Shown one piece after another: positions 5,397-60,534 of a DNA stretch of 64,000 nucleotides (position 1 is its first letter; each line of letters begins with the position of its first letter). Both the position numbers and the translations under genes were made by a program. The notes under the pieces are model-generated. The model had not been told where the DNA came from and ran no database searches. It worked only from the letters and a program-made list of their open reading frames with translations. The DNA comes from Trichoplax adhaerens. Lineage: Eukaryota; Animalia; Placozoa. The stretch is from assembly GCF_000150275.1 (NCBI RefSeq), contig NW_002060948.1:4250395-4314394 (forward strand), written 5' to 3'.

Positions 5397-6325
5397 TTAG
5401 TCGAAAGAAGATTTTACTGTTGAATTTCCTTGGCTGTTTTGGCTTTCTAAACGTTTTCGAATAGAAATTGGTCTTTGGTAGATGCTATTGTTACCAAAGC
5501 TACTTTTATAGGTATGGTTGTCGCTGTAAATAGGACTTGATGTTTGGTCTTGCGATAGTTTGGCTCTAACTGCATCGGGTGTTACTTTCTTATACGTAGA
5601 AGCTACACTATCAAGACTGGAATAACCATAATCTTCGTCATTTCTGTCCTCCTCCTTTATATTTGCCTTTGATTTTGACATTGATGTTAGAGTTCCATTT
5701 GAAAAACTAGCATTAATTATTCCATTAGTACTATTATCACTGGAAGTATCAGTTGTGCTAGAGTCGAATTCATCCGGTTGAAATTGAGAATCTTCGTCAA
5801 TGGTGGTTAGTGCACCAGTATGGTCTAATTTAGCTCGGTCATGGGAAGACATGTGTGGGTTCACTCTATCAATTTGTACCGCCGTCGATTTGGGCTGAGC
5901 ATAGGATATGGATGTCTTGATAGAATTGCTTGGGATAGTAGAATAGACTTGGTGGATATCATCGTCCTCATCATCGTCTGTTTTTTTGATTTCTCCGTTT
6001 GATTCTGCTTTTTTCACACTATCAGCAATTTTTGCATTCATATAGGTACTATTATATGGACTACTTTTGGTATCTCGACTTATGCTTGTGCTTACTGGAT
6101 CATCGTTGCCTTCAAATGCTGGGTTTTGTCTACTACTAGCATGATTGCCCTTAAAGATTGGATTATTGTTGAGGTTACTTATGTCCACCAATGGATGATC
6201 TAAAGACTGTTTTGATTTACTAACTACATATTTATTACGATAATAAATGAAGAGTAGTAAAACCGCGAAAGCTATTATTGCAGCTATTACACCAAGAGAA
6301 ATGGCGACGAAAAAGAGTGGAGATA
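5397..6325 (-). CDS. Gene A last exon: transmembrane helix and about 280-aa cytoplasmic tail
   Basis: Acceptor TTTTAAG at 6326-6332. The exon reads [33 protein letters not shown]... in frame with the listed ORF 5397-6191 and ends KSSFD*. Confidence 0.9.
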
Positions 6326-36893: not shown

Positions 36894-37164
36894 TTAAAGT
36901 TCAGTATTGAAGTTTTCAATCTTAGTTTCATTATTTTCTTCATAAATTATTGCAATGTTATTAAATATCACACGTGTAATGAAGGTTTTGTAGATGAAAT
37001 TTTATAGCGCTGGTATCCAATAATTAATACTTGGAACTTGATCATTTCGAGCTATTTCCTCAAATTAACAAGTATATGAGCTATTTCTTAAATTAATAGA
37101 CATTGAATATCTTTAATCGGTTATCAAACTACTGTACGGTGTGGAAACTAATGAACTATTTTGC

Positions 37165-40515: not shown

Positions 40516-43500
40516 TTAGCCATTGTTAGATTGATTTTCATTATTTTCGTAGCTTTCATAAATGTTATCTGAAATATTTTCTTCAGGTAAGCTGATACTT
40601 TGGCTGTTATTATTTGTAGCTCCTGCGATATAAACATTCTCTTTAGTTGGAAGCACTTTGAGTTGTACATCTGCCTGATGCGATTTGTAGGATCGTTTGT
40701 GTTTAAAGTACAGGATTAGAAATATTAGAATCAAAATAGTGGCACCGACAGTACCGACAGAAACTCCAATAATTAAAATGAGGTTTTGTGTTGTCTCCCC
40801 ACATCTAGTGCCTCGAAATCCTGCTGTACAGTTGCATCTTTGCTGGCCGTCTACGATGTGGCACTTCCCACCATTGTAACAGAAATTGTTACCGCAATCA
40901 TTATCAGAATAGCATCCTGTGTTGGAATAGGGATTACCTTGATAACCTGTTTCGCAGAGACAGCTATAAGATCCTTCCGTATTTACGCATATTGTATTTT
41001 TACCACATGAAGACTTATTTAAGCATTCATCAATGTCGATGCAGTTGCTTCCTGAATAGCCCGCTTTACATCGACATAAATAAGTACCTAGCAAGTTGAC
41101 ACATATTTGGCTAACATTGTTGCAACTGTTATCGATATTATTTGCACATTCGTCATAATCTTTAATAACGGCCTTCTGTAAATATTGTCCATTGATGGTG
41201 ACATTGCTACTAGTAATAATATTGCGTAGTTCATGTAGACTAAAGTTTGCTGTCAGTTGGAATAGTACATGGTAATCTATAATAATGCTGCCTGATCGAA
41301 AGCCTTTTACTTTAACTTGTTCAAAATTGGGGCTTGTTACTGAGGATGAATTAAAAGCAATTGTTAGCGCGGTAGTAGCTCTTCTTTGAAGTATTTGATA
41401 TTCAGCACTTGTTTGATCATTCAGTGACGAATTGAAATTACTAGTAATCTCAACAATTCCGATAAATAATTTACCATGTTGACAATGTGAATCTGATTGC
41501 AATTGCACTTCTGATAATAGACTATTGGAATAATATCCGATCTTACAACTGCAATATATGTTGTTGTGATATGTCATACAGTTTGCCTTTTTACCGCAAT
41601 TCTTGCTGTTATTACAAATAATTTCTGGAGTACAATCAATTCCATTACCGTAGTAGCCTAATTTGCATTGACATAGATAAGATCCAACAGTATTTATACA
41701 GTTAGCTTGAGTATGACAGTTATTCTGATTGAGTGAGCATTCATCGATGTCTTGACATAGAGACATAGCTTGACCTGAAAATCCAGGATCACACTTACAT
41801 ATGTAAGAACCATTAACGTTGAGGCAGGTAGAGTTATCAACACATTTATTTGTAGTAGTAGTAGAATTGCATTCGTTGGTATCATGACAAGTATAACCAT
41901 CGCCGTTATATCCAGATCTGCACTGACATTGATACGATCCCATAGTGTTAATGCACTGTGCAAAACTAGAACAGTTATGATGCGATGACGAACATTCGTT
42001 TTCGTCAACGCACGATTTTCCATTACCGGTATATCCTAACTTGCATTTGCATAGATAGGATCCTACATTATTAATACAATTAGCATTAGTGTGGCATTGA
42101 TTATAATTATTCGTAAAACATTCATTAATATCTTCACATATGAATCCGGTTCCTGTATAGCCAGAGTTACAGAAACAAGTATAAGATCCATTATTATTGA
42201 CACATTTGCTATGAATGGAGCAGTTGTGTAATCCAAGCGAACATTCATTGATGTCAGAACACGTTTTACCATTTCCAGTATATCCAGGATAACAAGAGCA
42301 CGTATACGATCCAATATTATTAAAGCAACGACTATTAGCTGAACAAACATTGCTGTTAAGTGTGCATTCGTTGACGTCCGTACATACCAATCCATTACCT
42401 ATAAAACCTTCATTGCATTGACATCTGTAAGATCCATTGGTATTACTACAGTTAGCTTTGGAACTGCAGGGATTATGCTGTAGTGATAAACATTCGTCTA
42501 TATCATTACATATATATCCATTTCCAGTATAGCCAGGTTTGCAGTTACAATTATACGACCCGATAATGTTTGTACATATTGCGTTAATCGAACATGTATC
42601 GACTCCAGTGGCGCATTCATTAATATCTTCACAGGTCCAACCATCTACTCTAAATTTATAACCTGCTAGACAATTACAAGTATAATTGCCCATGGTGTTA
42701 GTGCATTGATGATAACAAGGTGATGGACTTGCATCGCATTCATCTATATCGACACACTCAGTCAGGCTGCTATTCAAAAGGTGGTAACCTTTATTACAAG
42801 AACAAACTATAGATGAATTAACATAAATACAAATTTGTGAGCAATTATGACCTGGTGAGCATGGATTTGTATTATTACAAGTAAAACCGTCGCTGTTTAA
42901 TTGGAAGCCTTGATAACATTGACAAGAGTATGATCCTATAGTGTTAATACATTGTTGATCGCAGGGGTTATAGCGATTGCATTCGTCGATATCAACGCAT
43001 GTATGCTGATCATTACTCAACTCGTAGCCACTATTGCATGAGCAGGTGTAGTTGCCTTCTGTATTATTACATAAATGATCGCAATTTCCATTAGTTATAT
43101 TACATTCGTCGATATCGAAGCAAGTATATCCGTTACCTTGGTAACCTAGTTTACAAATGCATTCATATAAACCGGGTTGATTAATACATATCGCAAGATA
43201 ACTGCAATTGGCATTTCCGAATGTGCATTCATCAATGTCAGTACAGCCTTTCTTATCGTTATCCAGCTGATATCCAGGTAGACATTGGCAACTATAACTT
43301 CCATCTTCGTTGATACATGTTTGATTACACTGATGGGTTCCATTTTCACATTCATTTAAGTCGTAACATTTTCGTCCATCGACAATATAACCTATAGGAC
43401 AATGACTACAAGTGTAGCCAGCTTGCGGCGCCAGATTATCTGTACATGTTATATTTTCGAAACAGGGTTGATCAGCACATGCATCAAAATCTGATGTACA

Positions 43501-45744
43501 ATAATCTCCAGTCCATGCCGGATCACAAATGCATTCAACTAGATCTATATTTTCAATGCGAACCATTTCAGCATTATAATCACAGATTCCATTATTTAAA
43601 CAGTAACACATGATGACTTGCGGCATTAGTTCACTTGTTGCTCCTTTAGAATCTGTTGCAACAAATTTTAAAGTAATATTTTGGATAGTCGAAACATTCC
43701 AGGTAAGAATTAATGATTCTTTATCAAATATAGCATTTCGAGGTGAGTCGATCAATTGAATCGTTACCATATCACCCGGATTTGGGTCTGACACATTCAA
43801 CTTTGTTATAAATGTTTCTCCATATGTGACATTGTATATTTCCAGTCCTGATATTTGAGGTGGAAAGTTTTCTAACTGAATATTTGTTTCTTCATTGCTT
43901 ATGGAATTATTTTTGCTTATGATAGCAGCATTGAGATTTTGAGTTAGTGCTGCATCATAAAGACAAGTATAGTCGTTTCCGCACTGATCTACAGATTGAT
44001 TGTAGAAAAAAGTATTATTGCCAAACAATGCAACGATATTGTCACCAAATATTGGAGTAAATTCTGGATCCGTATAATTATAATAGGATTGATCGCTAGG
44101 ATAAGTGAAAAGTGAATCACTGATATTAATGGCCCACAACTGACCGAAATCATAATAGATTTGTGATTCTGTGGAATTAATATCGAGGTATGTTCCATCT
44201 GGCTTTTTGAAGTCATCGTCAATGTTATCATTCCACGTTCCTAGTAATCCAGCAGTATCACCTTTAATTTCCTCTGGACCGTTCATGGTAATAGTTAACA
44301 TCTCTGTTAGCATTGTTACTTCAACAGAAATTCCTGATGAAAATACTGCAGCGAGTGACTGATTAGATATTTTAACTATATCAACATTAGTATACTCACG
44401 GGATTCATTTAAAAGTAAAGAATCCATAGAGAATGCAACGGTGCTATTAACCAATACATCGATACCATTAAATGCTGAATTAAGTGAAAACTGAATAATA
44501 TCTGCGTTATTTTCTGTTGTAGCTACGCCTGAAAATACGGTAGCCGCTGCCGATAATGAACCGTTCGTTATTGTACGCATAGTACGCCCTTGTAATATAA
44601 ATGAACGATTTCCTGTTTGCAGTAAGACATATTCACCTAATCCATTGAAGGTATATTGTTTGCCATCTAAGGTTTTAATATGTGGATCGCCCCAGGTCCA
44701 AGCTCTTCTAGGGGGTCTATATCCTCTGCATGCATTAATGGGTCTTTTACTTATATATAAATTGCATAAGCTAGATTTAATACAGCAATCTCTTAATGCT
44801 CGGTAATCATAGAACTGATAGTAGTAATTTTTAAAGATAAATGAACTACCAGAAGGATACGTTGTAATAAGCGAACCAAAAGATGATCCAAGTGATGAGT
44901 AGCAGCATCTTTGATAGACACGTCTACCATTTTTAGCTCTACGTGAAAATCTTGATCTTGCACAGAAAGTAAAAATATTAAATCGAAATCGCCGATCCCA
45001 AATTGCTTGAAAAAACGTGCAAGGACAGGGTCTTCTTCTTAGTGCACGAAGATACATAGATGGAGAAATTTCGTTTGCATTCCATAGTTGACACCGATAT
45101 ACATGATTAACACGATAGATAGAAGGACTATCAATTCTATACATCCACCTTCCTTTTTTACCATAATTACCAAATGTGCTATCAATATAGAGAAGGTTTT
45201 TTGTATGTGAATCGGGTAATTCATATGTATAAGCTGATACTCCGTTACTATAACCAGCGCGAGGTCTAATAAATTTATACCTTTTCCACCAGTTCATTCC
45301 TTTATCATCGTAAAGAAAGTTTACAAACAAATTATTGCCATTCGATACCAGTATCAGTTGAAAAGTACTTGTTACGCCATATTTTGCTGAGCGAAAGGAC
45401 GGATATGGAACGATTTTATCCCATGTAATAACTATTACCAGGGAGGCCTCAAAGTTTGTTATAATTTGTTTGAATAGACCATATTGGTTTAGGTTAGGAT
45501 TATTATTGATAAAGTTTTGGTATTGATTTACATCATTTGTAGCAGAACTTAAAGTCTGCTCAGTTGATAAGGAGGGATTTAGAACTGAATGCTGGCTAAC
45601 ATAAATTTTAGAATATGAAGCATACGTACTGTCAGCATCTGCAAAAAATGGAGCTATAATAGGAACATGTTTAGATGTATACAACGGGTTAGCAGAACTT
45701 CCATAATACGCTTGATTGAAGGAAATGAATCCATTCATTGAAAT
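40516..45744 (-). CDS. 5.2-kb single exon: NIDO, AMOP, vWD (GDPH), EGF array, SEA, EGFs, TM, cytoplasmic tail (MUC4/SUSD2/Mesh-like)
   Basis: ORF 40516-45738 contains NIDO ([25 protein letters not shown]), AMOP ([20 protein letters not shown]), vWD ([37 protein letters not shown]), cbEGFs, SEA ([12 protein letters not shown]) and TM ([30 protein letters not shown]). Confidence 0.95.
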
Positions 45745-48700
45745 CTAAAATTGGTGGTGATTAGTGTAATTGTAGCCTTGATATCTAAATTTTATTACTA
45801 TTTTAAGTTAATTAATTGTTGAGAAAACTTACATATAATTTGCGGTAAAATTTGTTCATGTAAAATATTGGAGATCTCAAGTTGATAACGAACGACGCAT
45901 CATCTACTCTTCCAAACGACTGATCACTTGCCTGTGGCCCATATGGATATAATCTCAGTTCTTTAAAGAAAATTGCATAGGAATATTAATAGCAATTACT
46001 ACAATAGCAGGTCTTAATTGTGCTCATAGAAAAAATTACCGGCTATCAGTAATTTACTAGATACAGTTATGAAAGCCTTGGCTGCTACGTTCTGAATTAT
46101 TGTTTAAAATGAGTAATGTATCTTACATGTGCATATTACCCATATTACCTTTGCAGATTGAGCCATTGCCAACAAAACCTGGGTTGCATATGCAAGTATA
46201 GGAGCCAAGTGAATTATAACACGTTGCATCTGGACTGCATTGGTTCGATCCTATACTGCATTCATTTACATCTAAAATTTTAAATAAAAACTTAATTAAT
46301 TATGCAGTCGTAATACTTTCTCAACTTTTACTTGTAGAAAATTCCAGTGAATTTACGTACAAAGTGTAATTGGTTATGAAAATATAAAATACAGTCACGG
46401 AAGACGAACATACGTAAAGTAGGTAAATTTGTATCGTTACCTGAGCAGATGCGTCCATTTCCAGTAAATCCTGACTTGCATAGACATTGATAAGACCCGT
46501 TCAAGTTATTGCAAATTGCGTTAGTATGACATCCATGAGTATAAGAGATGCATTCATTCACATCTATTAGATCATATTCCAAGAAATTTATTATGAAATT
46601 AATAATAAAATAGATTCTAACCCATTCATTTAAAATCAGTAATTATATTCTTTCTAAAATATTGCTGACCAAATTTAAGGCTAGAACTTTGAAAGGGATT
46701 GTATTAAAAATACCTTTACAATTGAATCCGTTTCCTGTGAATCCGGGCTTACATTGACATGCATAAGACCCGTAGGAGTTGCTACATATTGCATTACTAT
46801 TACAACGATGTATCCCAATGCTACATTCATTAACATCTAGAAATTCATGGAACAATGATATAATTTTGTTAGACAGTAGGGATAAACATCGATAGCATAG
46901 TTCATAATAATTAATGTACGATTTTACTGTCCTGAAATCGGTGCTGCAGTTATTTTAATGTCCAGTTAAACGGTACTAAACAATTAATTTGTACATTATT
47001 TGGTATAATGTACTTCTAAAATAATTGAAGTTTTTATATTTTAACATTAGTTAGCAATTCGTCGATTTACGAAAACAAGTTTTATGATTTGCAAAAAATC
47101 TGAAAAAATTGTGTAAACGAAGAAAGCATATCAAGTAAATCGTCTGTACTATGAATTAATCGGAAAGAAATTCAATTTAAGATATAGGTAGTGGTTAGAT
47201 TATTACTCTCCATATGAAGATCCTTCGTCATTCTATCCATATTAAACAATAACTTGAAGAGTGAAAAATGCGCTCAAAAATGCGATATATTCAATTTAAA
47301 TCGGAAATTTACGTACCGAATTGGCAGTGAGTCCCACCAAATCCGCTATTGTTGCAAAAACAAGAGTAAGAATTTATTCCGTCTAGGCAAATTCCACCAT
47401 TTTGGCATGGATTGGATATGCATTCATCGATATTAAATTGACAGAGAGCACCACTATATCCAGATGAGCATATGCAACTGTAAGAAGCGATATGATCTAT
47501 ACAACTTCCTCCATTAATACAAGGTGATGACAAGCAATCATCAATATCTATGAATTAGTATCATGTAGAAAATAAGAAGTCTAGATTAGTCTTACTTTCG
47601 GATTTAGTAAGAATGGACTATTCTTACTGCTACGTATCTTTCACTAGTATAACATGACCTAAATGTGCTACTATGTTCTATTTAATTTTTAATCTTAGCA
47701 GATTCTGATACACTATTTTGCAAAAAGTTTTTAAGGATACCACTAGATATCATTATATATGAACTTAAACAAATACAACTTTTACTCTTCCAGAATTATA
47801 TCAAACAATTAGTGTACAAAATCTATAGATCTTACTCGTTTCGCAATGGATTCCAGTGAAACCAGTCGATGAACAATTGCAGGTATAAATATCAACACCA
47901 CGGATACATTGACCACTATTTACACAAGGCGATGATGAACATCTATCAACTATGATATCACAGCGATTGTTAGTATAGCCAGGTAAACAGTTGCAATTGT
48001 AATGATCGATTAAATCGATGCATGTTCCTGAATTTTGGCATGGGTAGGAAGCACATTCATCAATATTTACTTCACAATGTGTTCCAGTATAACCAGGTTG
48101 GCATGTACAATTATACATATCGACCATATCGTTACACATGCCGCCGTTTATACATGGAAAGCTACTACATTCATTGATACATGTTTCACATTGGTGTCCT
48201 GTATAGCCAGATAAGCAAGAACAATTATATTTATTTATATAGTCATTGCATCGGCCACCATTTAAACACGGCTTAGATTGACATTCATTGTAATCAATTT
48301 TGCAATCTGTTCCTCGATATCCAGATAAACAAGTACAGTTATAACCATTGATAAGATTGTGGCAAGTAGCTAAGTTTTGGCAAGGATTACTATTGCATTC
48401 ATTAATTTCTGCCTCGCATTGGTATCCAGTAAAGCCAGGTACACAAGAACAATTATATCGGTTAATAAGATCATGACATGTGCCATTATTAAAACATGGA
48501 CGGCTTTCACATTCATCGATATTAGTTTGGCAAACATCTTCTGAATAACCAGGTAGACAAATGCAAATGTATCTATCTATGAGATCTCTGCATGTTCCGC
48601 CATTTTGACATGGATTACTAATGCATTCGTTAATATTGGATTGACAGTGAGCTCCAGTAAATCCAGTAGTACAATTGCAATCGTATCTATTAATGCGATT

Positions 48701-51700
48701 GATACATTCGCCATTATTTTGGCAAGGCAATGATAGACATTCATTTATATCTTGTTCACAATGTGTACTAGTATAGCCAGCTCTGCATTGGCAAGCATAA
48801 GTATCAATTATATCGACGCATGTAGCGTTATTCTGGCATGGAGAAGAACTGCATTCGTTGATATCTGTTGAAAGTAGATAGAAATAAGTAATAAATCTTG
48901 TAAAATAAATAAAATCACATGAAGCTAGACATTTAACAATTTTTCAACAATTCTCAGGTTGAAGCATTTCTATATAAATGTGAATATTAACTGACTTATT
49001 TCACATTCATCGCCTGCAAATCCAGCCGAACAATTGCAATTATATCTGTTGACAAGATTGATACATTTGCCATGATTTTGACATGGTAATGATAGACATT
49101 CATTTATGTCTTGTTCACAATTTAAACCACTATATCCAGAGCTGCATTGGCAAGTGTAACCATTAATTATATCGGCGCATGTAGCGTTATTCTGGCATGG
49201 AGAAGAGCTACATTCGTTGATATCTGTTGCACGTAGACAGAAATTAGTAATAAATCTTGTAAAAAATTAAAATTGATATACTTAGATATTTAACTATTGT
49301 TCGATGAGTGTATTATTATGAATATTAAAAAGTTACTGACTTATTTCACATTGATCGCCCACGAATCCCGAAGCACAGGTACAATTATAATAGTTTGGGG
49401 CAGAATTAAAACATGTTGCTCCATTCTGACATGGGACAAATCTGCATCGATTAATGTCTATATTCATACCGATAAGTTACCGGATTAATAGGATGATATT
49501 CTGAATTAAAATTTACATATCAAAGATCTGTAAATCTGGATAACTTTATATATCAAAAGTCTTACCATCTTCGCAGAGATTTCCATAGTAATTGGATGTA
49601 CAATTACATGAGAATGAATTGATTTTATTAATACATATGCCATTATTTAGACAGGGTTCAACATGGCATTCGTTGATATCTGTTACAATTACAAATTTTA
49701 TACGTTTAGAATTGTTAGGAATAGATATCAGGTGATAAAATAGTATTATCAATTAGCAGAAACAGAGATTGTTTATAATACAAGATGTTGCGCCGACTAT
49801 CTAAAATAGTAAGTAATCTAATTATAGCTTACTGTTCTCGCAGTTAGTGCCACAATAACCAGAATTACAGTTACATTGATATTGATTTGATCCAAAATTA
49901 ATACAAGTGCCTCCATTCTGACACGGTGTTATCCTGCATCGATCATGATCTAATCATAATATGATCTTTGTTTAGTAAACAGTTTTCAATTAATTACAAA
50001 GATGGTACTTGGATTGAATTATTGAACAGCTTATTCATCTCAGTTTGTTAGGAAAAATAAAGCCATTGGATTACTGAAGTTTACAGTATGAAATGTTGAA
50101 AAGACTACATTTATTAATTTTATACATGTTAGATGGTGCAATAAAGTAGCTTTTATTTTTCATCTTACCGCTTTCACAGTTTGTTCCATTATAACCTAGC
50201 GCACAAATACAAGCATATCCATTTATAGAATCACTGCAACTTGCATTGTTACTGCACGGATTGGAAATACATTCGTCAATATCTAAGACAACCAATATTT
50301 CATCATAAGTACAAGCTAGTTATTTCTGCATATTAAATTAGCAATCTTTCTTGTCCTTTATAATTAATTTATGGATATGAGACAGTTACTTGTTTCACAA
50401 TGTGTTCCGGTAAATCCAACTGCACAACTACAATTATAGCTATCAGGTAAGATATTTGTGCATATAGCATCATTTAAACAGGGTCGCAATCGGCAGCGGT
50501 TATTATCTGCAGTGGATGAAAACATTTTAATTATAAATTTAATTCATTGAAATAGTGTATATTAAAAAATATTATAGTAGTCCAGTTTATAATTACAGCT
50601 ATCATTCATTAAGTGATAAACAAGTTAACAACACCTTATTTATTAATTGTAAGTGCAAATGATATTAATTTTTATTCAAACCATTTTGGCAGTTGGGACC
50701 ACTAAAGTTAGCTCTACAAACGCAATCATTGCCGGATACGCAATATCCATTCGCTGGATAGTAATATAGTAATTGCAGAAGACAAAAGGTACAGGTTAGC
50801 TAAATTTCTAAACTTAAATTATCTTCCATAACTAAGATTAACAAGTTAATAAAAAATAGCAATCCTTGACACCTGTGCATCCCTCTTTAATTGTGCATTG
50901 GTTGCATAAATTTCCAGTCCAGCCACTGCTGCATCTATTAATTTGCGACACGTTGAGTCAAGCTTGTATACTAGTATAAGTCGCATGATGAGGATAGTAA
51001 AGTAATACTTCTTAATACTGTAAGAGAGGCGAAAGAATTATTGACTTACAAGCACCCTCCAGGGGTATTTTTGCAACTTGCATGAGACAGGTCACAACCA
51101 TCCTTGCATATAGCTTAATTTGATATAAGTAGAATATAATTATTAGATCGCTATTAAACAGATATCATAATGATAATTCAATAGACATTTTTGAATTACT
51201 TATGGCTTTAATATCTACTTTGATTTTAAAAATTAAGCTTACCGGTATCACATATCGTTCCTACCCAACCTATTGCGCAAGAACAGTTATAACCATTAAC
51301 GAGGTCTTCACAGGTGGCAGAATTTAAGCAAGGATTGGAAGAACATTCATTGGTATCTACCGTTCATATTTTAATAAATATTTGTACGTTATGTTAAAGT
51401 ATAAAGTTAGTTCATTTTGAAAATTGTAAGGTTATCGAAGCTGGTTTATTTTATTGAAGTATTATGTAAAATGTAATGAAGTAATTTTAACTTTGATCGC
51501 AACACATATTTTAGATCTGTATTCGTCGATACGGTGTTCTATTACTCATGCGTGAAGGTTAGCATCTTATCAAAACTACTACAGCATTGGTAGTAGCATA
51601 AAAAAGAATTCGTTTCTCCTATTAATGAATTAGTATCAAAATTGATGACTTAAGATAATAAAATTTCAGTAGCATTAAATCTATTGATTGTAATGATGAC

Positions 51701-54700
51701 AAATTCTACATACGTTTTCGATAGTAAAATATTGTGTTACTGTCATGGCTGTATTAGTCATTGCTGTATCAGAGACTGTTGAAAGAATGTCGTATGATAC
51801 CGATACAGCATAAATATGATATTTCTACTACGAAAATAGGTATTTAGCCGCAATACAGTTATGGACTCCTGAAATCTCTATGATTGTTATAATTTGCTAG
51901 AGAAATTAGCACTAGTACTTCAGTCCTGGCAATGCGATACAACAATCAATTAGCTGCTTAGGTGTTTCCTTATGATACTTTTATTTCTCAACAGTTCTTT
52001 CGGTTTATAATCGAACATTATCTTAACTACTTCGCATGAACTGTGAAACAACGACACCCAATTTGTACTGCTGATCATGTCCTCATAGTAATCGCAGTAT
52101 CATAGTACTGTACTACATAACATTAATACCGTATACTAAAATCATAATAATGATAGAGTACGCTGTAAAGCCGGTAATAGAGGACTAATTTTTCGCTTTT
52201 TTCAATTTATATTATATGCAAGACAGATGATAATGAAATTGATATGGCCATAGTGAAAAAGAGAAATTTAATTGTGTATTGCCCGGATTTAGTTTGAGTA
52301 ATCATTAAAGTTGGCTGGTTTTATATAGTTCAGATAATTTTGATCTTGTACTAATAGTGAAAGTGAGTCAAAAATACTTGTTTCATTGCTATTTCAAATG
52401 TAACCTGAATATCATGTACATTATACAGCTATATAGCAGTTCTTAACTAAATGAAACAATTTCCATTATGAAGGCAAGGAATGTCCAGCGCAGTTATCGA
52501 TATTGAAGAATGTTCTTAAAATAGATTACCTTAATCATACCGCGTTTGTAATATTATCAAATAGCATTTTACACTCGTATGGTATTGTATGGGAAATAGA
52601 TGTGACTATAGCACGTAGTAGGGAATATGCTTCTACAAGACGATATTTACGAAGTTTACTTAACAAAATGCGTATAGTAATATTCTGCAGTCTTACTCGT
52701 TTCACAGTGAGTTCCACTAAAACCAGATGATGTACAATTACATGAGTAACTGTTAATACCGTCAATGCATTGTCCGCCATTTGTACAGGGAGACGATGAA
52801 CATTCATTAATATTGATATTACAGTGGGTACCAGTATAACCGACCGAACAGCTACAATTGTATCCATTGACCAAATCATTGCATGATCCTTGGATGCATG
52901 GATTACTTACGCATTCATTGATATTACTTTCACAATTGTCATTTGTATAGCCAGCGGCACAGGTACAGTTATAACGGTTAATTAAATCGATGCAAGTTCC
53001 GTTATATTGACATGGATTTGACGAGCATTCAATAATTTCTATTTCACAATCAAATCCAGTATAGCCAGGTAAGCATAAGCAGTCATATTGATCGATTAAA
53101 TCGTTGCATGTGCCATCGTTTAAGCATGGACCACTTTCGCAATCATCGATATTAGTTTGACATTCATCTCCTTCATAACCAGGTATGCAAGTACAGTTAT
53201 AGCCGTCAATTAAATCTTGACATCTTCCACCATTTTGACAAGGACTACTGCTGCATTCATTGATATTGGTTTGACAATCAGTTCCAGTAAACCCAGAAAT
53301 GCAGTTACAGACATATTTGTTAATTTGATTGATACATTCTCCATCGCTTTGACATGGCAACGATAAACATTCATCAATATCTTGGCTACAATATGCTCCA
53401 GTATAACCAGCAATACACTGGCAGTAATAACCATTAATTACATCAGCACACGTAGCATTATTTAGACATGGAGAGGATAAGCATTCGTTAATGTCTTTAG
53501 AGCATAAATGAAAAGAAGCATATTGAGAAATCAAGTTATGTATTACTAAGATCGGACTTACGCAACAAAGATATAAAAATATCAGATTATCAACTAACTT
53601 ATAGTGCACTGATCGCCTGCGAATCCAGCCAGACAGGTGCATGTATAGCCATTAATGCCATCTTTACAAGTTGATAAGTGTGGGCAGGGATTTGAGAAAC
53701 ACTCATCAATATCTATATACAGTAATAAGATTTGAAATTATTTACTTACATTTCTATATATCGTATTAGAGGGAAGGTGAAATATAAAGACAGAATATGG
53801 TTCAGAATATTTTTGGTACCAATTTTTCTTAATTTGACAGAATAAATAAATATTTCAAAAGTAGAGCTAAGTCTTTTATAACTTTACTTGTTCCGCATTG
53901 GGTTTCAGTATATCCTGCTGCATATGTACAGTTATATCTATTGACTAAGTTATCACAGGTTGTATTGTTTAAGCACGGAGTCGATGTACATTCATTGATA
54001 TTTAAATCATTCAACCTGGACGTAAATGTTCTGCTATTTTAGGCTAATACCTCAAATCTCCGTGTGTTACAAGTAGTAAAATACATAAAAAAATACACAA
54101 TTACCTTGATCACAATTTGTTCCTGTATATCCTGACGCACAAGTACATGTGTAAACGTTGAGGCTAACATAAGAACAAGTACCTCCGTTCTGACATGGTG
54201 AAGATAATCGGCATAAATTACCATCTGGTGTGTATGAAAATAATGTTACTCATTTATTATTTTATCCAGTACACAGTAAAAATTAGAATTATATGTCATT
54301 AATTATCTTGATACAATTCATTATATATATAGTTAAGTATTCAGAATTGATGATAGATACCAGTTTCACAATGAGTTCCTGTCCAATCAGAAGGACAATT
54401 GCAAGTGTAACTATTTACACCATCGACACATGTAGAGTAAGCATGTTGACATGGATTCGATACACATTCGTCGATATCTATCATGTAGTTTAATTAGATA
54501 GAGTAGATTAAGGGTAAGTAAATACCTCAAAATACTATCAGCCAGCCTCAAGAATATATTTACGTATAATAGACACTATATTGCAGTCGAGGCTACTTTG
54601 AAAGCTGAATTTAATTAAGTAAAGTTTACTTGTGCTGCAGATCGCTCCTGTATATCCGGCTGCACATGTACAATTATAGTAGAGATGATAGTCGTGGCAT

Positions 54701-57700
54701 GTTGCTCCGTTAAGGCAAGGTATAGAGGTACATTCTGCAAAATCTACAAAAGTATTTTATAAAATTAGACGGAAATTAAGTCTATAAACTATTGCAATTT
54801 CATTAAAATGTAACAGATTGTTCTGTGTTAAAGAACGCTTATTTGTTGATAAATTCTGTAAAATCTTGTTACAATATAATCAGATTATTTATATTCAGCT
54901 TATTATAATAAAAGATGTAACGAATCTAACCTTGATCACAATTGGTTCCTGTATAACCAGGAGCACATGTACAAGAATAAGTAAATACTCCTGTAGCAGT
55001 ACATGTAGCTCCGTTTTTACAAGGTGCACTTATGCGACATTTATTAGCGTCTAAAGAATAAATAAATAAATGTTAATATAGATCCTCGTTACGATAACTT
55101 GTAACAAGTTGTAATTATCGGTTCAGTATTAGTTACACTGTCATAATCAGTTAAGTAACGAATTACCAGTTTCGCAATGTGTACCAGTCCAATCAGAAGG
55201 ACAATTGCATGTATATCCGTTTATTCCATCAACACATGTAGCATGGGTATGCTGACATGGATTCGATGCGCATTCGTCAATGTCTAGCATTAAATAGGTA
55301 ATATCAAGTCGTGTAAGAAATGGTTAAGCTGATCTTAATTATATAAGTTTTACTTGTGGTACAGATAGCTCCAGTATATCCAGCTGCACACGTGCAATTA
55401 TAATAAAGATGGTAATCGTTGCATGTTGCTCCGTTAAGGCAAGGTGTAGAGGCACATTCAGCAACATCTACAAAAGAATTAGATAAAAGTTAGACGATAA
55501 ATTAGGGTAATAAAAGTTACAGCAATTTCATTACAATGTAACAGTTTTTCTTAGCTATAGAACGCTTATTTGTTAACAAAAACTGTATAATCCTATTGCA
55601 ACATAATCAGATTGTTTATATTGATTTTATTATTAAGGATGATATAAAGAAAACAAACCTTGATCGCAATTGGTTCCTGTATAACCAGAAGTACAAGTGC
55701 ATTTATATGTGCTTACTCCTGTGGCAGCACATGTTGCTCCATTTTTACAAGGTGCACTTCTGCGACATTCATTAGCATCTAAAGAATAAATAAATGTTAT
55801 TATAGATTATATTTACGTTCAATTTTAACAAATTGAGTTTATATTGGCTTAGCATTAATCAAACTGTCATACTAAGTTAAATAACAAATTACCAATGTCG
55901 CAATGTGTGCCAGTCCAGTCAGAAGGACACTGGCATGTATATCCATTTATTCCATCAAGACATGTAGCATAGACATGCTGGCATGGACTGGATGCACATT
56001 CATTAATATCTGGTATTAAATTTGCAAATATTAAGTCTTTCAGCTTATATTTAAAAGCAATCGTCTATTGCAATGAGGTGTATTTAAAGTTTGAGAATAA
56101 TGATCGAAACAGGATATTAACATACTTGAACTACAATCTGATCCGGTATAGCCATTAGCACAACTGCATGTATAACTGTTGACACCATCGACACAAGTTC
56201 CACCATTTTGGCAAGTTATACTGGCACAATCATCAATATCTAAGGATGACAGAGATGAAAACGATACATATGTAAGTGTTTTCTTTAATTTTTCCTTAAA
56301 TATTTTTTATAACGAGTTGGATTCAGAATTCTATCGCAAGTGTATTTAAGCCATGGTATATTCTTCTAGAGAAAAATTCTTACGGAATATTTGCAAGCTA
56401 AGTATACTATGAACGATATGTTTCTATCTTTAATTGTGTATATTAAACCGCAATATATATGCAGATCTAATTACATATGTGAATATTTTCACTTTATCTA
56501 ATTAATAACTTTGGTTTCTTACTAGATGCGCAAGTTGATCCAGTAAAGCCAGTTACACATGCACAAGTATAAGTATTGGTTCCAGTATAGGTACATGTGC
56601 CGCTATTTTGACAAGGAGTACTCGATCGACAAAGATTTCCATCTATTTTTGTAGGAATGTAGATGAGACGTTATACTAAGTATGAATTATTGTAAAACAG
56701 CAATTTGTTATTTAATTAATCAAATCATCTAAAGCTTATTGCAGAAATCCATTCTGACAAGGTATGAATTAATTATCCGTAGATAACAGAATCTTACCGG
56801 TTTCACAGTTAGTCCCAGTCCATTCTTTGGGGCAGGTACAGGAATATGAATTGACGTTGTTATTACAAGTTGCATAAACATGTTGGCATGGATTAGATGC
56901 ACACTCGTTAATGTCTATAGTTAAAAAGTAAATATTGTAATTAGTACGTATGAATCCAATTTCTTCCAGAGTCGGCATTTTATTATATGCGTTATAAAAC
57001 AATTATTAGACTACTAGGCGATTAAAGTTACGCGTACATTCTTTATCGTAAGATAATAGTAGAAATCTTATAGTTAGTTTATGATATACCTGTTTGACAG
57101 TTTGTGTCAGTGTAGCCTGTCACGCAGGAACAAGTGTAAGCATTTGCCCCATTATTTGCACATGTGCCACCATTCTGACAGGGGGTACTACGACAACTAT
57201 TTAAATCTAATTAAATTAAAACAAATAGTTCTTTAATAAGTATATAAGAATTCATGAATTTAATGCAGGCATGTATTTCGTTAATATATAGCTAAAACTG
57301 TCTTTTCGAATATCAATTAGGAACAAGGAATACCTTGAAAAAGTGATGGTTCAATTAATGCAAAAATTAAATTATATTTATAGGAACGCTTAAACTCGAA
57401 GTTTACTTGCACTTAGAACTGCGTTTATCTGGTTAAATGTATTTAATATCTTAGATATCGTATTTATTTGAATATTATCAGATTTATAGATGTAACTCGT
57501 GCAAGTAATGGCGTATTCCTACCGGTGTTACAATCTGTCCCAGACCATGTACTTTCACAAGTAACAGAAACCTTTAATGTAAATTCGGATTTATTATCAG
57601 TGATGGGCCGAGAACCAGTCATGGTGATTGTTGATGAAGATCCAGGTGTAACGTAAAATGTGCTTGAAAGTTTGTCAAGTAAGTCGTCAGCACCATCACT

Positions 57701-58274
57701 ATAATCTTTATCCATAGATGTAATATGTACATTGACATAGCCCTAAAGCAAAGATCTTTGTTACTCCAAAACAAATCGATAATCCAAAATAACTTTAAGT
57801 TACATTTTTAAACACTTACTTCGTATCGTTCACTGATTGAACCTTGATAAGGATTATTTACGCCACTATCTGTTAGCGCTTGACTACTTGTGAAAGTTAT
57901 AGTTTCACCGCCATCCCATACTTTAGTAGTTAGAGAACCATAAGTACATGTATCATTGATATTGCCTTTATTACTGCATAAAATGAAGTAATAGTCGCAT
58001 GAAGAGAAAGTATCGCATTTGCCATTATCCCAGTTGCGTTCATTCTTGTTGTAATATTTTTGAAATTCGTAAGTGACGTAAGCATGAACATCAGCTTCAA
58101 CGTACTGTTATTATTTGGAAAGGTGAGAAGAAAATATTAGGTGCTTTTACTTAAATAATCGATAATTACCGATTTTGGCACTAGATACATTTATTTAAAT
58201 CCGTAGTCGATATAAATAACTAAACAAGGAATTATCAGAATTACTATGCTATCTTCAGTAAAGATAGTCTTCAT
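40516..58274 (-). CDS. Gene B: chimeric membrane protein with a Notch-ligand-like head (C2, about 21 EGF, DOS, about 21 EGF) fused to NIDO-AMOP-vWD-17 EGF-SEA-3 EGF-TM-tail
   Basis: Head exons: 57820-58104, 57523-57742, single-EGF exons to about 54105, 53599-53712, 52697-53494, 51243-51355, DOS 50682-51113, 47836-48864 and 47317-47547. Fibrillin-type cbEGF exons 46714-46836, 46441-46562 and 46149-46271 follow. Then a phase-1 NIDO exon 45833-45960 (ELRLYPYGP...) and a phase-0 terminal exon 40516-45744. The junctions checked are phase-compatible, and no separate signal-peptide exon or terminal exon was seen between head and body. Confidence 0.7.
50682..51113 (-). CDS. Gene B DOS motif exons
   Basis: [22 protein letters not shown]|[20 protein letters not shown]|[24 protein letters not shown], with the same exon structure as 14473-14902. 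Confidence 0.85.
52420..52505 (-). pseudogene. Dead EGF exon inside gene B (homologue of gene A exon about 11679-11792)
   Basis: CTTCAA-TATCGATAACTGCGCTGGACATTCC... versus TTTCAG|ATATCGATGACTGCGCTGGCAATCC. The acceptor G is lost and the exon is frameshifted. Confidence 0.75.
53888..54001 (-). pseudogene. Dead EGF exon inside gene B (homologue of gene A exon 18255-18368)
   Basis: Acceptor TTTAG changed to TTTAA (c-to-t at 54002 on the + strand). Cys-to-Tyr (NCTY vs NCIC) and Gly-to-Glu substitutions. Confidence 0.8.
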
Positions 58275-59234
58275 GATCACAATATTGTCAACAGTTCATT
58301 GTTAATGTAAAAGACATAAGCGGAAAAGGAAAAGTATAATCTAGCAATACACAGCCGCCCCTTCTGTTACAAGGCAGTGTTGATCATGGCTGTACTACGT
58401 TTTGAAACTATAAAGTTGAAGGTTAGGCAGTTGGGCATTATGAAAATTACATTGTTAATCTTTAATTTGATGGAAATGTATTGCATTTTTACTACATTAG
58501 TAAAGAAAGGACTACTTGTAAGAATAATTTTAATCTATGATTTGTAATGCAAATTCTCCCGTAGTACTTCAACTTCTAAACTTTAAGCTTTTGACCTATG
58601 AAGTTAAAAATTACTTAATTCTTTTATATTACAATACTGTGGAATTCTAACGTATAATTGTGGGTGTATAATATGTGATATTAATACTGTATTATTAAAA
58701 GCACGTTGTCGTCGATGATGAATTTGAGTGCGAGAAAGGAATTTATTTATCTTAATACATTCTCATCCTAAAATCTGATGAAATTGATGTAGATGTCAAC
58801 ATCGGGTGAAATCATGTTATCTTATTGTATCTGGTATCGTTCTTTGACCAATATCTTGTATGATTGTTACCGTGATGATGAGTGTCATATCGGGCAATTG
58901 AAGCATGAATTTTTATTATCTTTTCTGTAGGCGTGTGATATTATCTTTATCTTAAAAAGTAATCATTCTAAGAAGTGCATTCGAAGACGCCTCAGCGATA
59001 ATCAGTAACAATCGATAATGTATGATATTACTTTAATTTCTAATCTTAATTGAAGTTAGTAGATAGCATGTTTTAAAGCAGCCGTGATTACATAAAGGAA
59101 CTACAACATCTGGTAAGTGCTTATCAATTAAAATTGTGAACGACGTTATGATATACTAAAGGTATATTATCACTTCCAATAAAGATAAAGAGTAAGCTTA
59201 AGTAATTAAAATTTAGAATAGTGATTTTAATCCT

Positions 59235-60019
59235 TGTAGCGCCGCGTAAATTTTAAGATTCCTTCGGCATTAACTAGCTGAGTAATACTCTAGTTATAAG
59301 TCCTTGGTACTATAAAAAGTAATATTAATCTGTATAATGATTCTACAGTCCTAAGTATCAGGATAATTATCCGGTTCATCTTAGCAGGGTGTTGTTTCTG
59401 GGTTCGATTGATTTTCAAGTAAGAAATTACTATATATTGTTAACATTCGGTATATTTGACGTATTGCATGAGAACTAATTCATCCTCGGATGCGGGAAAT
59501 TCTAGAGGTACTCCGACAAATGTACTAATTGGACTACTTTTACACAAATAATCAATACCTGACCGATATCTGGTAGTCCTTGGCTACTCTTTATTTAAGG
59601 CAAAGTAATGATCCAAAACGACGTAGAATATTATTTGACTTTACGGTCTAACTGAAACAATGTAGATCACGATGGATCTTATTACTGAACGTAACTAAAT
59701 CAAACAGCGCACGTGATGGTGCTTAGACTTCTTAAACAATCATAATTACTTATGATAGCCGATAACTGGCAACTACTAACTGCAACTCTGATGAGTTGAC
59801 TGACTAGAATCGAACCACTACTTTCGACTGTTCTTATCAGGGAGGAGAAGTGATTTACGACGGACCTCCCAGAACGTGATTCGCATAGCGGTTTAATAAA
59901 CCTTTTAAATTTGAAGGCTATATCTATATCGGTTATTCTTATTGTGAGATAAGATAGTGTTTTGTTAATTCTAGCAAATTGAACAAATGTAAGTGAAAAG
60001 AAGTAAGAGAGATCTTACA
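59235..60019 (+). mobile_element. Solo LTR, family 3 (785 bp), with an empty site in the paralogous copy
   Basis: Termini TGTA...TACA; perfect TSD atcct (59230-59234 and 60020-60024); a single atcct at the empty site 23574-23578; TATAAAA at 59311 and AATAAA at 59895. Confidence 0.9.
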
Positions 60020-60534
60020 ATCCTATCGATATAATATAGAAAATTTGCCAAAAGTTTTAATTACTTGGCTAACATCAGTTACTGATTAAGGCATTTTATA
60101 ATAAGATAATAGAAGTCGATATATTCTACATGTCAATGAGCTATACTACCTTGGGCTAAAGAAAAATATGTACGTTTTCGTGCACTAGAATGTTCAGTGA
60201 TATTTATTGAATTACCTGTAAATTAAATAAAGCTAAAACACTTATTAATAGCAATAACTTGATATAGAGACGGATCATTTTTGTCGAAAACTGATTTGAT
60301 ATAATGAACGTTGAAGAGAAGAGACTTCAATGGCTAATTAAATAAAATTGACGCTATGGATTAAATTTTAACCAGGGGCTAAGAGGATTGTAAAGATGAC
60401 AAATAAGGTTTTATTATTGGTTGGGTAATATCTACTGCTGGTAACTTTAAAGTTTAATATACTATTAATTTATCACGCATTTATCTTGGTTTAGGATTAT
60501 GATCAGAATTTAATGGTACAACTTAATAGAAACG

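What the first reader, a model, noticed from the sequence alone, without database searches (positions are those of the whole stretch)
40516..58274. Chimeric gene: Notch-ligand head on a MUC4/SUSD2/Mesh-type mucin-like body, giving one head with two bodies
Seen: gene B shares C2 and the first EGF exons almost base for base with gene A, and has a diverged DOS block. After the homologue of exon 11372-11602 (47317-47547) it switches to fibrillin-type cbEGF exons and NIDO-AMOP-vWD-EGF-SEA-TM, with matching phases (47317 to 46836, 46149 to 45960, 45833 to 45744). Known: NIDO-AMOP-vWD proteins are epithelial adhesion/mucin proteins, and I know of no described fusion with a C2/DOS ligand head. Inference: a paired system presenting the same extracellular tip on two different stalks and tails, diversified by exon shuffling. 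This resembles paired-receptor or allorecognition loci. It is the best candidate in the window for an undescribed system.
Basis: partly seen in the sequence, partly recalled or inferred. Interest (0 to 1): 0.85.

Follow-up and report, generated by a model that had tools for sequence, protein, structure and literature searches.

The report
Jagged-like head fused to mucin body
In the simple animal Trichoplax, one transcribed gene joins the front end of a Notch-ligand-like protein to the body of a MUC4-type surface mucin, and that front end is kept almost identical to its neighbour's; this domain combination is new, but nothing here shows that the two genes act as a paired recognition system.

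Summary
The window is Trichoplax adhaerens scaffold DNA. On the minus strand, 34 exons from 58274 to 40516 form one open frame of 3,660 codons, all with AG/GT borders.

- **Transcripts:** spliced contigs from three independent studies join 52697|51356, every exon down to 47317|46836, and then run on about 6 kb, the length of the NIDO body.
- **Body:** NIDO, a diverged AMOP, GDPH-vWD, about 20 calcium-binding EGFs, SEA, a membrane anchor and a short tail.
- **Head:** a C2 domain of the Notch-ligand type, without a DSL domain.
- **Head versus gene A:** the head plus 12 EGF exons and their introns are about 98.5-99% identical to gene A. Older homology of 70-87% lies on both sides, which is the pattern of gene conversion.
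- **Older Jagged-like exons:** under purifying selection, dN/dS about 0.1.

**Not shown directly:** that the C2 head sits in the same RNA. I infer it because there is no Met and no candidate signal exon downstream.

The paired-receptor or allorecognition reading is untested speculation. The public annotation holds only a 257-aa fragment of the body. The scan had already found the DSL-less Jagged-like family elsewhere in this genome. What is new here is the fusion to a mucin body.

The parts
58221..58274 (-). Predicted exon 1: ATG at 58274 and a hydrophobic signal-like segment. The donor (GTTATT) is weak and not verified by RNA.
   Evidence: Sequence read; frame check. Nearly identical in gene A.
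57820..58104 (-). Exon 2: N-terminal half of a C2 (MNNL-type) domain.
   Evidence: Pfam MNNL E 7.7e-4, 19.4 bits, below the cut-off. A profile of 11 family exons hits the C2 domains of DLL4 and Drosophila Delta in the PDB at E 4e-4, and these are the top three hits. 98% identical to A 22191-22475.
57523..57742 (-). Exon 3: the rest of the C2 domain, ending in a single Cys loop where a DSL domain would start.
   Evidence: Read. No DSL match anywhere in the window. An earlier scan report on gene A reads this loop the same way.
54105..57206 (-). Twelve single-EGF exons of phase 1-1: 57206-57090, 56914-56798, 56642-56523, 56239-56126, 56009-55893, 55778-55659, 55467-55354, 55283-55167, 55050-54931, 54743-54630, 54477-54361, 54224-54105.
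   Evidence: All have AG/GT borders and six Cys each. 98-99% identical to gene A, introns included.
54105..59234 (.). Homogenised tract shared with gene A (A 18480-23578). It covers about 960 bp upstream of the ATG, the head, 12 EGF exons and their introns.
   Evidence: Divergence is 0.92% in exons, 1.48% in introns and 3.1% upstream. The flanks are homologous to A at only 87% (60019-60432) and 69-75% (54100-53720).
53888..53999 (-). Dead EGF exon. The acceptor AG of gene A reads AA here, and one Cys codon has become Tyr. It is presumably skipped, which keeps the frame. The upper bound is approximate.
   Evidence: A/B alignment; no in-phase acceptor found.
53599..53712 (-). EGF exon in which colinear homology with A 18084-17990 ends.
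   Evidence: Alignment. By length arithmetic, the 1,864-1,878-nt RNA contigs cover this exon plus 14-28 nt further upstream.
52697..53494 (-). 'B1' exon of 7 EGFs. It is a copy of A's 10-EGF exon (13077-11887) with a clean in-frame loss of three EGFs.
   Evidence: 82-85% protein identity to A; dN/dS 0.13 and dS 0.6. The RNA contig runs through it; a loose end maps to 53186-53215.
51243..51356 (-). First exon of 'B2', the older copy of A 15151-11376. It is spliced to 52697.
   Evidence: Joint 52697|51356, skipping 1,340 bases with GT..AG ends, in X4, X5 and X10, which come from three studies.
50682..51113 (-). Diverged DOS-like EGF1-2 pair in three short exons (51113-51050, 50934-50873, 50753-50682).
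   Evidence: Joints seen in RNA. Weak Pfam hits to EGF_DL_JAG (E 0.023) and JAG1-like_EGF2 (E 0.09) on one exon-spanning open stretch. The Cys pattern was read.
48996..50506 (-). Five single-EGF exons and one 2-EGF exon (50506-50390, 50282-50169, 49949-49833, 49679-49566, 49457-49341, 49223-48996).
   Evidence: All joints seen in three runs.
47836..48864 (-). 'B2' exon of 9 EGFs, a second and older copy of A's long EGF exon.
   Evidence: 70% protein identity to A, dN/dS 0.11, dS about 1.5. Joints 48996|48864 and 47836|47547.
47317..47547 (-). 2-EGF exon, the last Jagged-like exon and the homologue of A 11602-11372.
   Evidence: It is joined to 46836 in three runs.
46149..46836 (-). Three cbEGF exons (46836-46714, 46563-46441, 46271-46149), native to the mucin-like gene family.
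   Evidence: Pfam EGF_CA and EGF_3. The Trichoplax paralogue P0002 has the same three cbEGFs in front of its NIDO domain. Joint 47317|46836.
45833..45960 (-). Exon encoding the start of the NIDO domain. It enters in phase 1 and leaves in phase 0.
   Evidence: Sequence; frame; same motif in paralogues.
40516..45744 (-). Terminal exon with these features:
- NIDO 45127-45735
- AMOP-like 44704-45096
- GDPH 44680-44691
- vWD 44191-44700
- C8-3 43921-44019
- cbEGF array 41479-43671
- SEA 41251-41460, with a G|SIII site inside 41278-41304
- EGFs 40786-41127
- TM 40705-40782
- 65-aa tail, then the stop
   Evidence: Pfam; coordinates; AMOP homology. The length of the 7,393-nt RNA contig fits the whole exon plus about 425 nt of 3' UTR.

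Best explanation
Gene B is one expressed mosaic gene of Trichoplax adhaerens. It encodes a type I membrane glycoprotein of about 3,660 aa.

**Domain order:** signal peptide; Notch-ligand-type C2 domain; a vestigial loop in place of DSL; about 45 Notch/Jagged-type EGFs, including a diverged DOS-like pair; three cbEGFs; NIDO; AMOP; GDPH-vWD; about 20 cbEGFs; SEA; EGFs; membrane anchor; short tail.

**How it arose (inferred from homology levels):**
1. Exon shuffling among phase 1-1 EGF exons in a tandem array of DSL-less Jagged-like genes. An old partial copy of the A-type gene (B2, dS about 1.5) became joined in the 47316-46837 intron to the body of a placozoan MUC4-like 'mucin-like protein' gene.
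2. A second partial A-type copy (head to B1, dS about 0.6) came to lie upstream.
3. Recently, about 5 kb of promoter, head and 12 EGF exons were homogenised with gene A by gene conversion (dS about 0.02).

**How it works (inferred from the families):** by analogy with MUC4, SUSD2 and Mesh, it is probably cleaved at GDPH and at the SEA G|S site. It would then sit on an epithelial surface as a glycocalyx or adhesion molecule, holding out a lipid- and/or Notch-family-binding C2-EGF tip identical to that of the Jagged-like neighbour.

**Shown:**
- the exon chain from B1 to the 3' end in RNA
- the open frame
- the domain content
- purifying selection
- the conversion pattern

**Inferred:**
- inclusion of the C2 head in the transcript
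- the cleavages
- the location and any binding partner
For: **Organism.** TRIADDRAFT_54443 matches the genome at 100%.

**Gene model.**
- The 34-exon model has a 10,983-nt open frame and every border is AG/GT.
- Thirteen GT..AG joints from 52697|51356 to 47317|46836 appear in spliced contigs of X4, X5 and X10, which come from three studies.
- A 7,393-nt contig has the length expected for the whole body. Intron 46967-47166 has zero depth in those three runs.

**Domains.**

**Gene conversion.** Head identity with older homology on both flanks.

**Selection.**
- dN/dS is 0.13 for B1 versus A and 0.11 for B2 versus A, and all Cys are kept.
- The neighbouring copy C (36893-28824) has lost many Cys.

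**Head inclusion.**
- There is no Met between model residues 187 and 1575.
- No ATG-plus-hydrophobic-core-plus-phase-1-donor candidate exists in the four introns scanned.
- The constrained B1/B2 frame therefore needs a start upstream.
- The RNA contigs extend 14-28 nt beyond exon 53712 (arithmetic).

**Family context.**
- Paralogues carry SRCR, MAM or EGF heads on the same body.
- A MUC4-like SRCR/VWD/EGF gene is reported in placozoan upper epithelium (PMC11452194).
Against: - No read or contig was laid on 53600-58300, so the C2 head has not been seen joined to B1. Head contigs would in any case be hard to tell from gene A at 98.5% identity.
- The exon-1 donor is weak (GTTATT).
- One head-side EGF exon is dead in B.
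- Pfam thresholds are not reached for MNNL, AMOP, C8-3 or the DOS-type EGFs.
- Contig depths cannot prove that a single isoform exists.
- Three loose ends lead to sequence outside the window. One maps to another scaffold and one was not found in the assembly; the third was sought in the window only.
- The cleavages and the function rest on analogy alone.
Confidence: 0.75

Rival explanations
1. The body transcript (B1-B2-NIDO) starts at its own, unrecognised 5' exon. The near-identical C2 head upstream would then be a separate short gene or a silent recent copy of gene A's 5' end. The chimera would be Jagged-type EGFs on a mucin body, without the C2 tip.
For: - The head-to-B1 link was not observed, because one search covered only 46767-52766.
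- The EGF exon between the head and exon 53712 is dead.
- Recently copied DNA stays open whether or not it is used.
- Loose ends at 51345 and 51351 lead to sequence that is not in the window; the 51345 end is also absent from the assembly.
Against: - There is no Met codon in model residues 187-1575 and no signal-exon candidate in the introns 54104-53713, 53598-53495, 52696-51357 and 47316-46837.
- Only one joint enters exon 51356, and it comes from 52697, in three studies.
- RNA contigs run 14-28 nt beyond exon 53712.
- The loose ends differ between runs and start inside an exon, as assembly chimeras at repeated EGF words would.
- Head exons diverge less than head introns (0.92% against 1.48%).
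Confidence: 0.15
2. A and B form a paired system in which the same recognition tip is mounted on a signalling stalk and on a mucin stalk. It would work like paired immune receptors or an allorecognition locus, with gene conversion keeping the tips matched.
For: - The tips are near-identical while the rest of the genes is 66-85% alike, and the pattern fits gene conversion.
- The anchors and tails differ.
- The genes lie in a tandem array with a decayed third copy, as in fast-turning receptor clusters.
- That paired receptors share these traits is from general knowledge, not tested here.
Against: - I saw no ITIM/ITAM-like motif and no charged TM residue in B's anchor and tail (read by eye).
- Crude dN/dS in the head is about 0.4 from only 20 changes, with no sign of diversifying selection.
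- Only 17 variant sites were found in 6 kb across four runs, though these may be clonal cultures.
- No ligand is known.
- Conversion between tandem repeats needs no functional reason.
- The body family takes many different heads.
Confidence: 0.07
3. The joined RNA is a by-product. Transcription reads through from a truncated Jagged-like pseudogene into the mucin gene, and no functional chimeric protein results.
For: - Tandem partial duplicates, one dead exon and a decayed neighbour show that the locus is in flux.
- Public annotation holds only a 257-aa fragment here.
Against: - The frame stays open over 10,983 nt and 34 exons.
- dN/dS is about 0.1, with dS of 0.6-1.5, in the Jagged-like exons.
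- All six Cys are kept in each EGF.
- Splicing is uniform in three studies, and contig depths are similar for the B1/B2 contig and the body contig within X4 and X5 (34.5 against 40.6, and 38.7 against 44), though depth is a weak measure there.
Confidence: 0.03

Closest known systems
MUC4 / SUSD2 / Mesh-type membrane proteins, and the placozoan and cnidarian 'mucin-like protein' family
   Same: - Colinear NIDO-AMOP-vWD with a GDPH site and the MUC4-type C8-3 region, followed by EGFs, SEA and a single membrane anchor.
- Vertebrate MUC4 proteins align over 86-96% of the 700-aa core at 29-34% identity.
- Trichoplax paralogues are 60-66% identical and have the same three cbEGFs in front of NIDO.
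   Different: - The N-terminal part is neither a PTS mucin repeat (MUC4) nor SRCR/MAM (placozoan paralogues). It is a C2 domain plus about 45 Jagged-type EGFs.
- AMOP and C8-3 fall below Pfam's cut-offs.
Jagged/Serrate and Delta (DSL ligands of Notch)
   Same: - An N-terminal C2 (MNNL-type) domain.
- Arrays of Notch-type EGFs in phase 1-1 exons.
- An EGF1-2 pair with the Delta/Jagged Cys spacing.
- A type I membrane protein.
   Different: - No DSL domain. The only DSL in the genome is on scaffold C1403, next to a strong MNNL match.
- Thirteen live EGF exons, the B1 exon and one more EGF lie between C2 and the DOS-like pair.
- B has no VWC and no Jagged-type tail.
DSL-less Jagged-like gene family of Trichoplax (gene A in this window; cluster near C1409:1.83-1.90 Mb; earlier scan reports s1-747284, s1-784167, s1-766207, s1-766220)
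   Same: - The head exon is 98% identical to A's and 30-54% identical to ten other loci.
- The same vestigial DSL loop and the same EGF exon types.
- B1 and B2 are copies of A's exons.
   Different: - After exon 47547-47317, B continues into a mucin-type body. A continues into VWC-like exons, a membrane anchor and a tail of about 275 aa.
- No other C2-head locus lies near a NIDO locus in this genome.
Paired receptors kept alike by gene conversion (for example KIR or SIRP; recalled from general knowledge, not tested)
   Same: Neighbouring genes have near-identical distal ectodomains and different anchors and tails, with a conversion-like identity step.
   Different: - No immune-type signalling motifs were seen.
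- Only the distal 655 of 3,660 residues are shared.
- No ligand, polymorphism or expression data exist.

Membership tests
MUC4/SUSD2/Mesh-type NIDO-AMOP-vWD proteins | NIDO domain | tested here: met
   Pfam PF06119 at 85.8-89.9 bits against a cut-off of 25. It begins in exon 45960-45833.
MUC4/SUSD2/Mesh-type NIDO-AMOP-vWD proteins | AMOP domain between NIDO and vWD | tested here: inconclusive
   - Pfam PF03782 gives only 11.2 bits, E 0.41.
- BLASTP aligns residues 216-353 onto residues 482-641 of mesh-like P0134 at E 1e-9. Pfam calls AMOP at residues 479-611 of P0134 (E 2.6e-37). The Cys pattern is shared.
MUC4/SUSD2/Mesh-type NIDO-AMOP-vWD proteins | vWD domain with a GDPH autocleavage motif | tested here: met
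   - PF00094 at 55.1 bits against a cut-off of 22.9.
- GDPH lies at 44691-44680.
- Cleavage itself was not tested.
MUC4/SUSD2/Mesh-type NIDO-AMOP-vWD proteins | Single C-terminal membrane anchor, with EGF and/or SEA modules before it | tested here: met
   - SEA at 37 bits against a cut-off of 26.4.
- A G|SIII motif and a 26-residue hydrophobic segment at 40782-40705.
DSL ligands (Delta/Jagged) | N-terminal C2 (MNNL) domain | tested here: met
   - Pfam MNNL on one exon is below the cut-off: 19.4 against 22.5 bits.
- The family profile finds the C2 domains of DLL4 and Delta as the top three PDB hits at E 4e-4 to 7e-4.
- One family member passes Pfam MNNL at 35.5 bits.
DSL ligands (Delta/Jagged) | DSL domain | tested here: not met
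   A six-frame search of the whole genome with PF01414 finds one locus only, C1403:1214973, outside the window. Exon 3 ends in a single Cys loop.
DSL ligands (Delta/Jagged) | DOS-type EGF1-2 directly after DSL | tested here: inconclusive
   - A pair with Delta/Jagged-like Cys spacing exists at 51113-50682 and is transcribed.
- Pfam EGF_DL_JAG (E 0.023) and JAG1-like_EGF2 (E 0.09) are below their cut-offs.
- The pair lies about 800 residues from the C2 domain.
Jagged/Serrate subfamily | VWC domain before the membrane anchor | tested here: not met
   B has none. Gene A has a weak VWC match of 24.3 bits against a cut-off of 27.6 at 7443-7772.
Paired receptors / allorecognition loci | Opposing signalling motifs, or high allelic polymorphism with diversifying selection | not testable with these tools
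   - No ITIM/ITAM-like motif and no charged TM residue were seen by eye in B's anchor and tail.
- The head has 9 synonymous and 11 non-synonymous differences from A.
- No population data are available.

The most novel reading that the evidence does not exclude
A and B are a functionally coupled pair. Gene conversion keeps one C2-EGF binding tip identical on two carriers: a Jagged-like protein with a long cytoplasmic tail, and a self-cleaving, sheddable mucin-type stalk. The mucin form would then compete with, mask or present the same partner (Notch or a membrane lipid) as the signalling form. That would be a decoy or paired arrangement at the base of animal cell-cell signalling.
Probability: 0.1. 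Interest if true: 0.8.

Novelty: new variant of a known kind. Interest (0 to 1): 0.5.

Why it matters
- **A new mosaic caught in the making.** It is a clear, transcribed example of how a large extracellular protein is assembled by shuffling phase 1-1 EGF exons between neighbouring genes. Three layers of different age are still readable in the DNA: dS about 1.5, 0.6 and 0.02.
- **A domain combination not in the searched literature or the public gene models.** It places a Notch-ligand-type C2 domain on a MUC4-type body. I found no paper in the searchable library describing this.
- **It escapes architecture searches.** The public gene model here is a 257-aa fragment.
- **Relevance to placozoan biology.** It adds a member with a different fate to the DSL-less Jagged-like family, and a new head to the MUC4-like surface glycoproteins. 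Published surveys list Jagged as absent from placozoans (PMC2770060).
- **Practical consequence.** Single-cell atlases built on the old gene models will have split or missed this gene.

Tried and rejected
- **Profile search of the protein database.** I searched with a profile of the three copies of the long EGF exon, hoping for annotated Trichoplax models or transcript-derived ORFs that would show the exons upstream of B1. It returned only generic EGF proteins of 32-53% identity and nothing from this locus.
- **Searches for a full-length annotated orthologue.**
  - A search limited to 957-3,045 aa and one limited to 1,527-4,860 aa found none.
  - The length-free representative search also found none. 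Its only exact match is a 257-aa fragment from this scaffold.
- **The look-up of encoding contigs was closed.** I therefore could not fetch the 11-kb contig of P0001, the likely orthologue of the body in another placozoan (69% identity, reciprocal best). Its upstream exons remain unread.
- **A single head exon against PDB sequences** gave nothing significant. Only the family profile did.
- **Loose ends.**
  - The one at 48555 is the B1 exon cross-matching B2.
  - The one at 50388 maps to another scaffold.
  - The one at 51345 was not found in the assembly.
  - I treat them as assembly chimeras at repeated EGF words, not as alternative exons. The 51345 and 51351 ends are not fully explained.
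- **The 'goes back 4290' joint** is the same cross-match, not a back-splice.
- **Run X8** shows low-depth contigs across introns and no joints. It behaves like DNA or unspliced RNA, so I did not count it as support.
- **The joined model.** The 3,660-aa model was assembled only inside local scripts, to check frame, Met positions and motifs. It was not sent to any search or folding tool. All searches were done exon by exon, by reference.


Full report
**What and where**

The window is AT-rich animal DNA (GC about 32%). The genome it comes from has 105,631,681 bases in 1,414 contigs and encodes TRIADDRAFT_54443 at 100% identity. It is therefore the Trichoplax adhaerens assembly, and the window is C1409:4250395-4314394.

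Three related genes lie head to tail on the minus strand:
- **Gene A** (about 5400-23600) is a DSL-less Jagged-like gene already treated by this scan (s1-747284).
- **Gene C** (about 28800-36900) is a decayed copy.
- **Gene B** (40516-58274) is the finding.

*Identity with gene A.*
- BLASTN aligns B 53633-59234 with A 18008-23578 at 95.5%.
- A global alignment shows 97-99.5% identity per 200 bases from 58700 to 54300, introns included. Identity drops sharply right after the donor at 54105.
- Downstream, B carries two separate copies of A's long EGF exon:
  - 53494-52697 (B1) is about 80% identical in DNA and 82-85% in protein, with a clean loss of three EGFs.
  - 48864-47836 (B2) is about 76% identical in DNA and 68-70% in protein.
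- B2 sits in a block (51358-47321) that is colinear with A 15151-11376 at 66-76%.

*The switch.* After exon 47547-47317, the homologue of A 11602-11372, the exons change character:
- three cbEGF exons;
- a short exon that opens a NIDO domain;
- a 5.2-kb terminal exon.

*Domains of the terminal exon*:
- Pfam finds NIDO (86-90 bits), VWD (55 bits), C8-3_MUC4 (23.8 bits, just under the cut-off), at least 15 cbEGFs and SEA (37 bits).
- A 26-residue membrane anchor and a 65-residue tail follow.
- AMOP fails Pfam (E 0.41). The stretch still aligns at E 1e-9 exactly onto the Pfam-positive AMOP domain of a brittle-star mesh-like protein, with the Cys pattern shared up to the GDPH motif.

**It is one transcription unit**

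I used the single read-laying run on 46767-52766.
- Runs X4, X5 and X10 come from three studies, and X10 is on record as RNA-Seq. Spliced contigs in all three show thirteen joints with GT..AG ends on the minus strand.
- These include 52697|51356 (a 1,340-base intron) and 47317|46836 (480 bases). The intron interiors have zero depth.
- One contig of 1,864-1,878 nt runs from 49177 up through B2, across to 52697 and on through B1. A loose end maps to 53186-53215.
- By length, that contig covers exon 53712-53599 plus 14-28 nt more.
- One X5 contig of 7,393 nt starts in the B2 long exon and crosses 47317|46836. It runs on for the length expected of the whole body plus about 425 nt of 3' UTR.
- X8 gave low-depth unspliced contigs and no joints. 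I read it as DNA-like and do not count it.

I did not find one. No other joint enters those exons, and a scan of four introns for an ATG with a hydrophobic core and a phase-1 donor found nothing.

**The whole model**

I joined the 34 exons in a local script only. The joined model was never sent to a search or fold tool, and all searches were done exon by exon.
- The result is an open frame of 10,983 nt (3,660 codons) with AG/GT at every border and about 60 EGF-like modules.
- One EGF exon present in A is dead in B: its acceptor AG reads AA and one Cys codon reads Tyr. Skipping it keeps the frame.

**Is the C2 head part of it?**

This is the one link I could not observe. The case for it is indirect but fairly strong:
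- B1 and B2 are under purifying selection. dN/dS is 0.13 and 0.11 against A, with dS of 0.6 and about 1.5, and every Cys is kept. They are therefore translated.
- The model has no Met codon between residues 187 and 1575, and no hidden signal exon was found.
- The RNA contigs continue upstream of exon 53712.
- The head exons have intact splice sites and diverge less from A than their introns do (0.92% against 1.48%).

I put the full head-to-tail reading at about 0.75. The B1-B2-mucin chimera alone stands at about 0.95.

**What the head is**
- The head exon alone scores below Pfam's MNNL cut-off (19.4 bits).
- It belongs to a family of twelve loci in this genome.
- A profile of eleven of them finds the N-terminal C2 domains of DLL4 and Drosophila Delta as the three best PDB matches, at E 4e-4 to 7e-4.
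- One family member passes Pfam MNNL.
- There is no DSL domain. The only DSL in the genome sits on another scaffold beside a strong MNNL match, which is the canonical Delta.

So 'Notch-ligand-type C2 head' is fair. 'Notch ligand' is not shown.

**History**

The identity profile has three levels:
- B2 against A, dS about 1.5;
- B1 against A, dS about 0.6;
- the head against A, about 0.02 (9 synonymous changes).

The near-identical 5-kb tract is flanked on both sides by older homology to A: 87% at 60019-60432 and 69-75% at 54100-53720. That pattern indicates gene conversion within an older duplicate, not a fresh duplication. The tract includes about 960 bases upstream of the ATG, so A and B may share regulatory DNA. 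Further upstream, 60536-62130 resembles the flank of copy C.

Copy C has lost many EGF cysteines. It is a useful contrast to the intact B exons.

**The body's family**
- The closest proteins are placozoan 'mucin-like proteins' at 60-69% identity. Their N-termini carry SRCR, MAM, EGF or Ser-rich segments, then the same three cbEGFs and NIDO.
- A MUC4-like SRCR/VWD/EGF gene of this kind is reported in placozoan upper epithelial cells, as a likely glycocalyx component (PMC11452194).
- No other NIDO locus in the genome lies near a C2-head locus, so this fusion is a one-off within the family.
- P0001, from an ENA assembly, is the reciprocal best match of B's body at 69% and is probably its orthologue in another placozoan.

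**Function**

By analogy with MUC4, SUSD2 and Mesh (established knowledge of those families, not tested here), the GDPH site and the SEA G|SIII site predict self-cleavage into non-covalently held subunits on an epithelial surface. What the C2-EGF tip binds is unknown.

Nothing tested here supports the paired-receptor or allorecognition idea. I saw no opposing signalling motifs, the 20 head differences show no sign of diversifying selection, and no polymorphism data exist. I keep it as the novel case at about 0.1.

**Novelty**
- Published surveys list Jagged as absent from placozoans and note only an EGF+VWC association (PMC2770060).
- No paper in the searchable library combines NIDO and AMOP with Trichoplax. 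The one paper that holds both MNNL and NIDO is on an unrelated topic, by its title and abstract.
- The public model for this locus is a 257-aa fragment.
- This scan had already found the DSL-less Jagged-like family on other DNA of the genome.

What is new here is the fusion to a mucin body and the conversion-maintained shared tip. I class it as a new variant of known kinds, of moderate interest.

Noticed in passing
window 28824-36893 (minus strand): A third C2-headed copy ('gene C') lies between A and B. Its head exon is 53% identical to B's. It has about 17 EGF-like exons, many of which have lost cysteines, so it looks like a decaying pseudogene. Its upstream flank 37170-38732 is 79% identical to 60536-62130, upstream of B.
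   Followed up: partly
window 53888-53999 (minus strand): An EGF exon that is intact in gene A is dead in gene B. The splice acceptor AG has become AA and one Cys codon has become Tyr. This looks like exon death within an otherwise constrained gene.
   Followed up: yes
window 59234-60019: A stretch of about 785 bp present upstream of B has no counterpart in gene A's upstream region. It interrupts otherwise homologous flanks (A 23573-23578) and may be an insertion. I did not characterise it.
   Followed up: no
window 1196-2458 (minus strand): A 420-aa ORF with no Pfam match. An earlier scan note reads it as a possible domesticated tyrosine recombinase (s1-747305). I did not examine it.
   Followed up: no
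G000:C1409:4376677-4376967 (about 62 kb beyond the window's end): Another C2-head exon, 54% identical to B's, lies just outside the window, so the tandem array of C2-headed genes extends further. Twelve such head exons exist genome-wide, but only one DSL domain.
   Followed up: partly
window 51345-51351 (loose ends): Contigs in X4, X10 and X5 leave exon 51356-51243 some 5-11 bases before its upstream border and continue into sequence that is not in the window. The 51345 loose end is also absent from the assembly at up to 2 mismatches. They are probably assembly chimeras at repeated EGF words, but this is unexplained.
   Followed up: partly
window 5400-6326 and 7077-7778 (minus strand): Gene A ends with VWC-like Cys-rich exons, then a terminal exon that holds a 24-residue membrane anchor and a Ser-rich tail of about 275 aa. 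This is probably the 'EGF+VWC' association that Gazave et al. 2009 noted in Trichoplax.
   Followed up: partly
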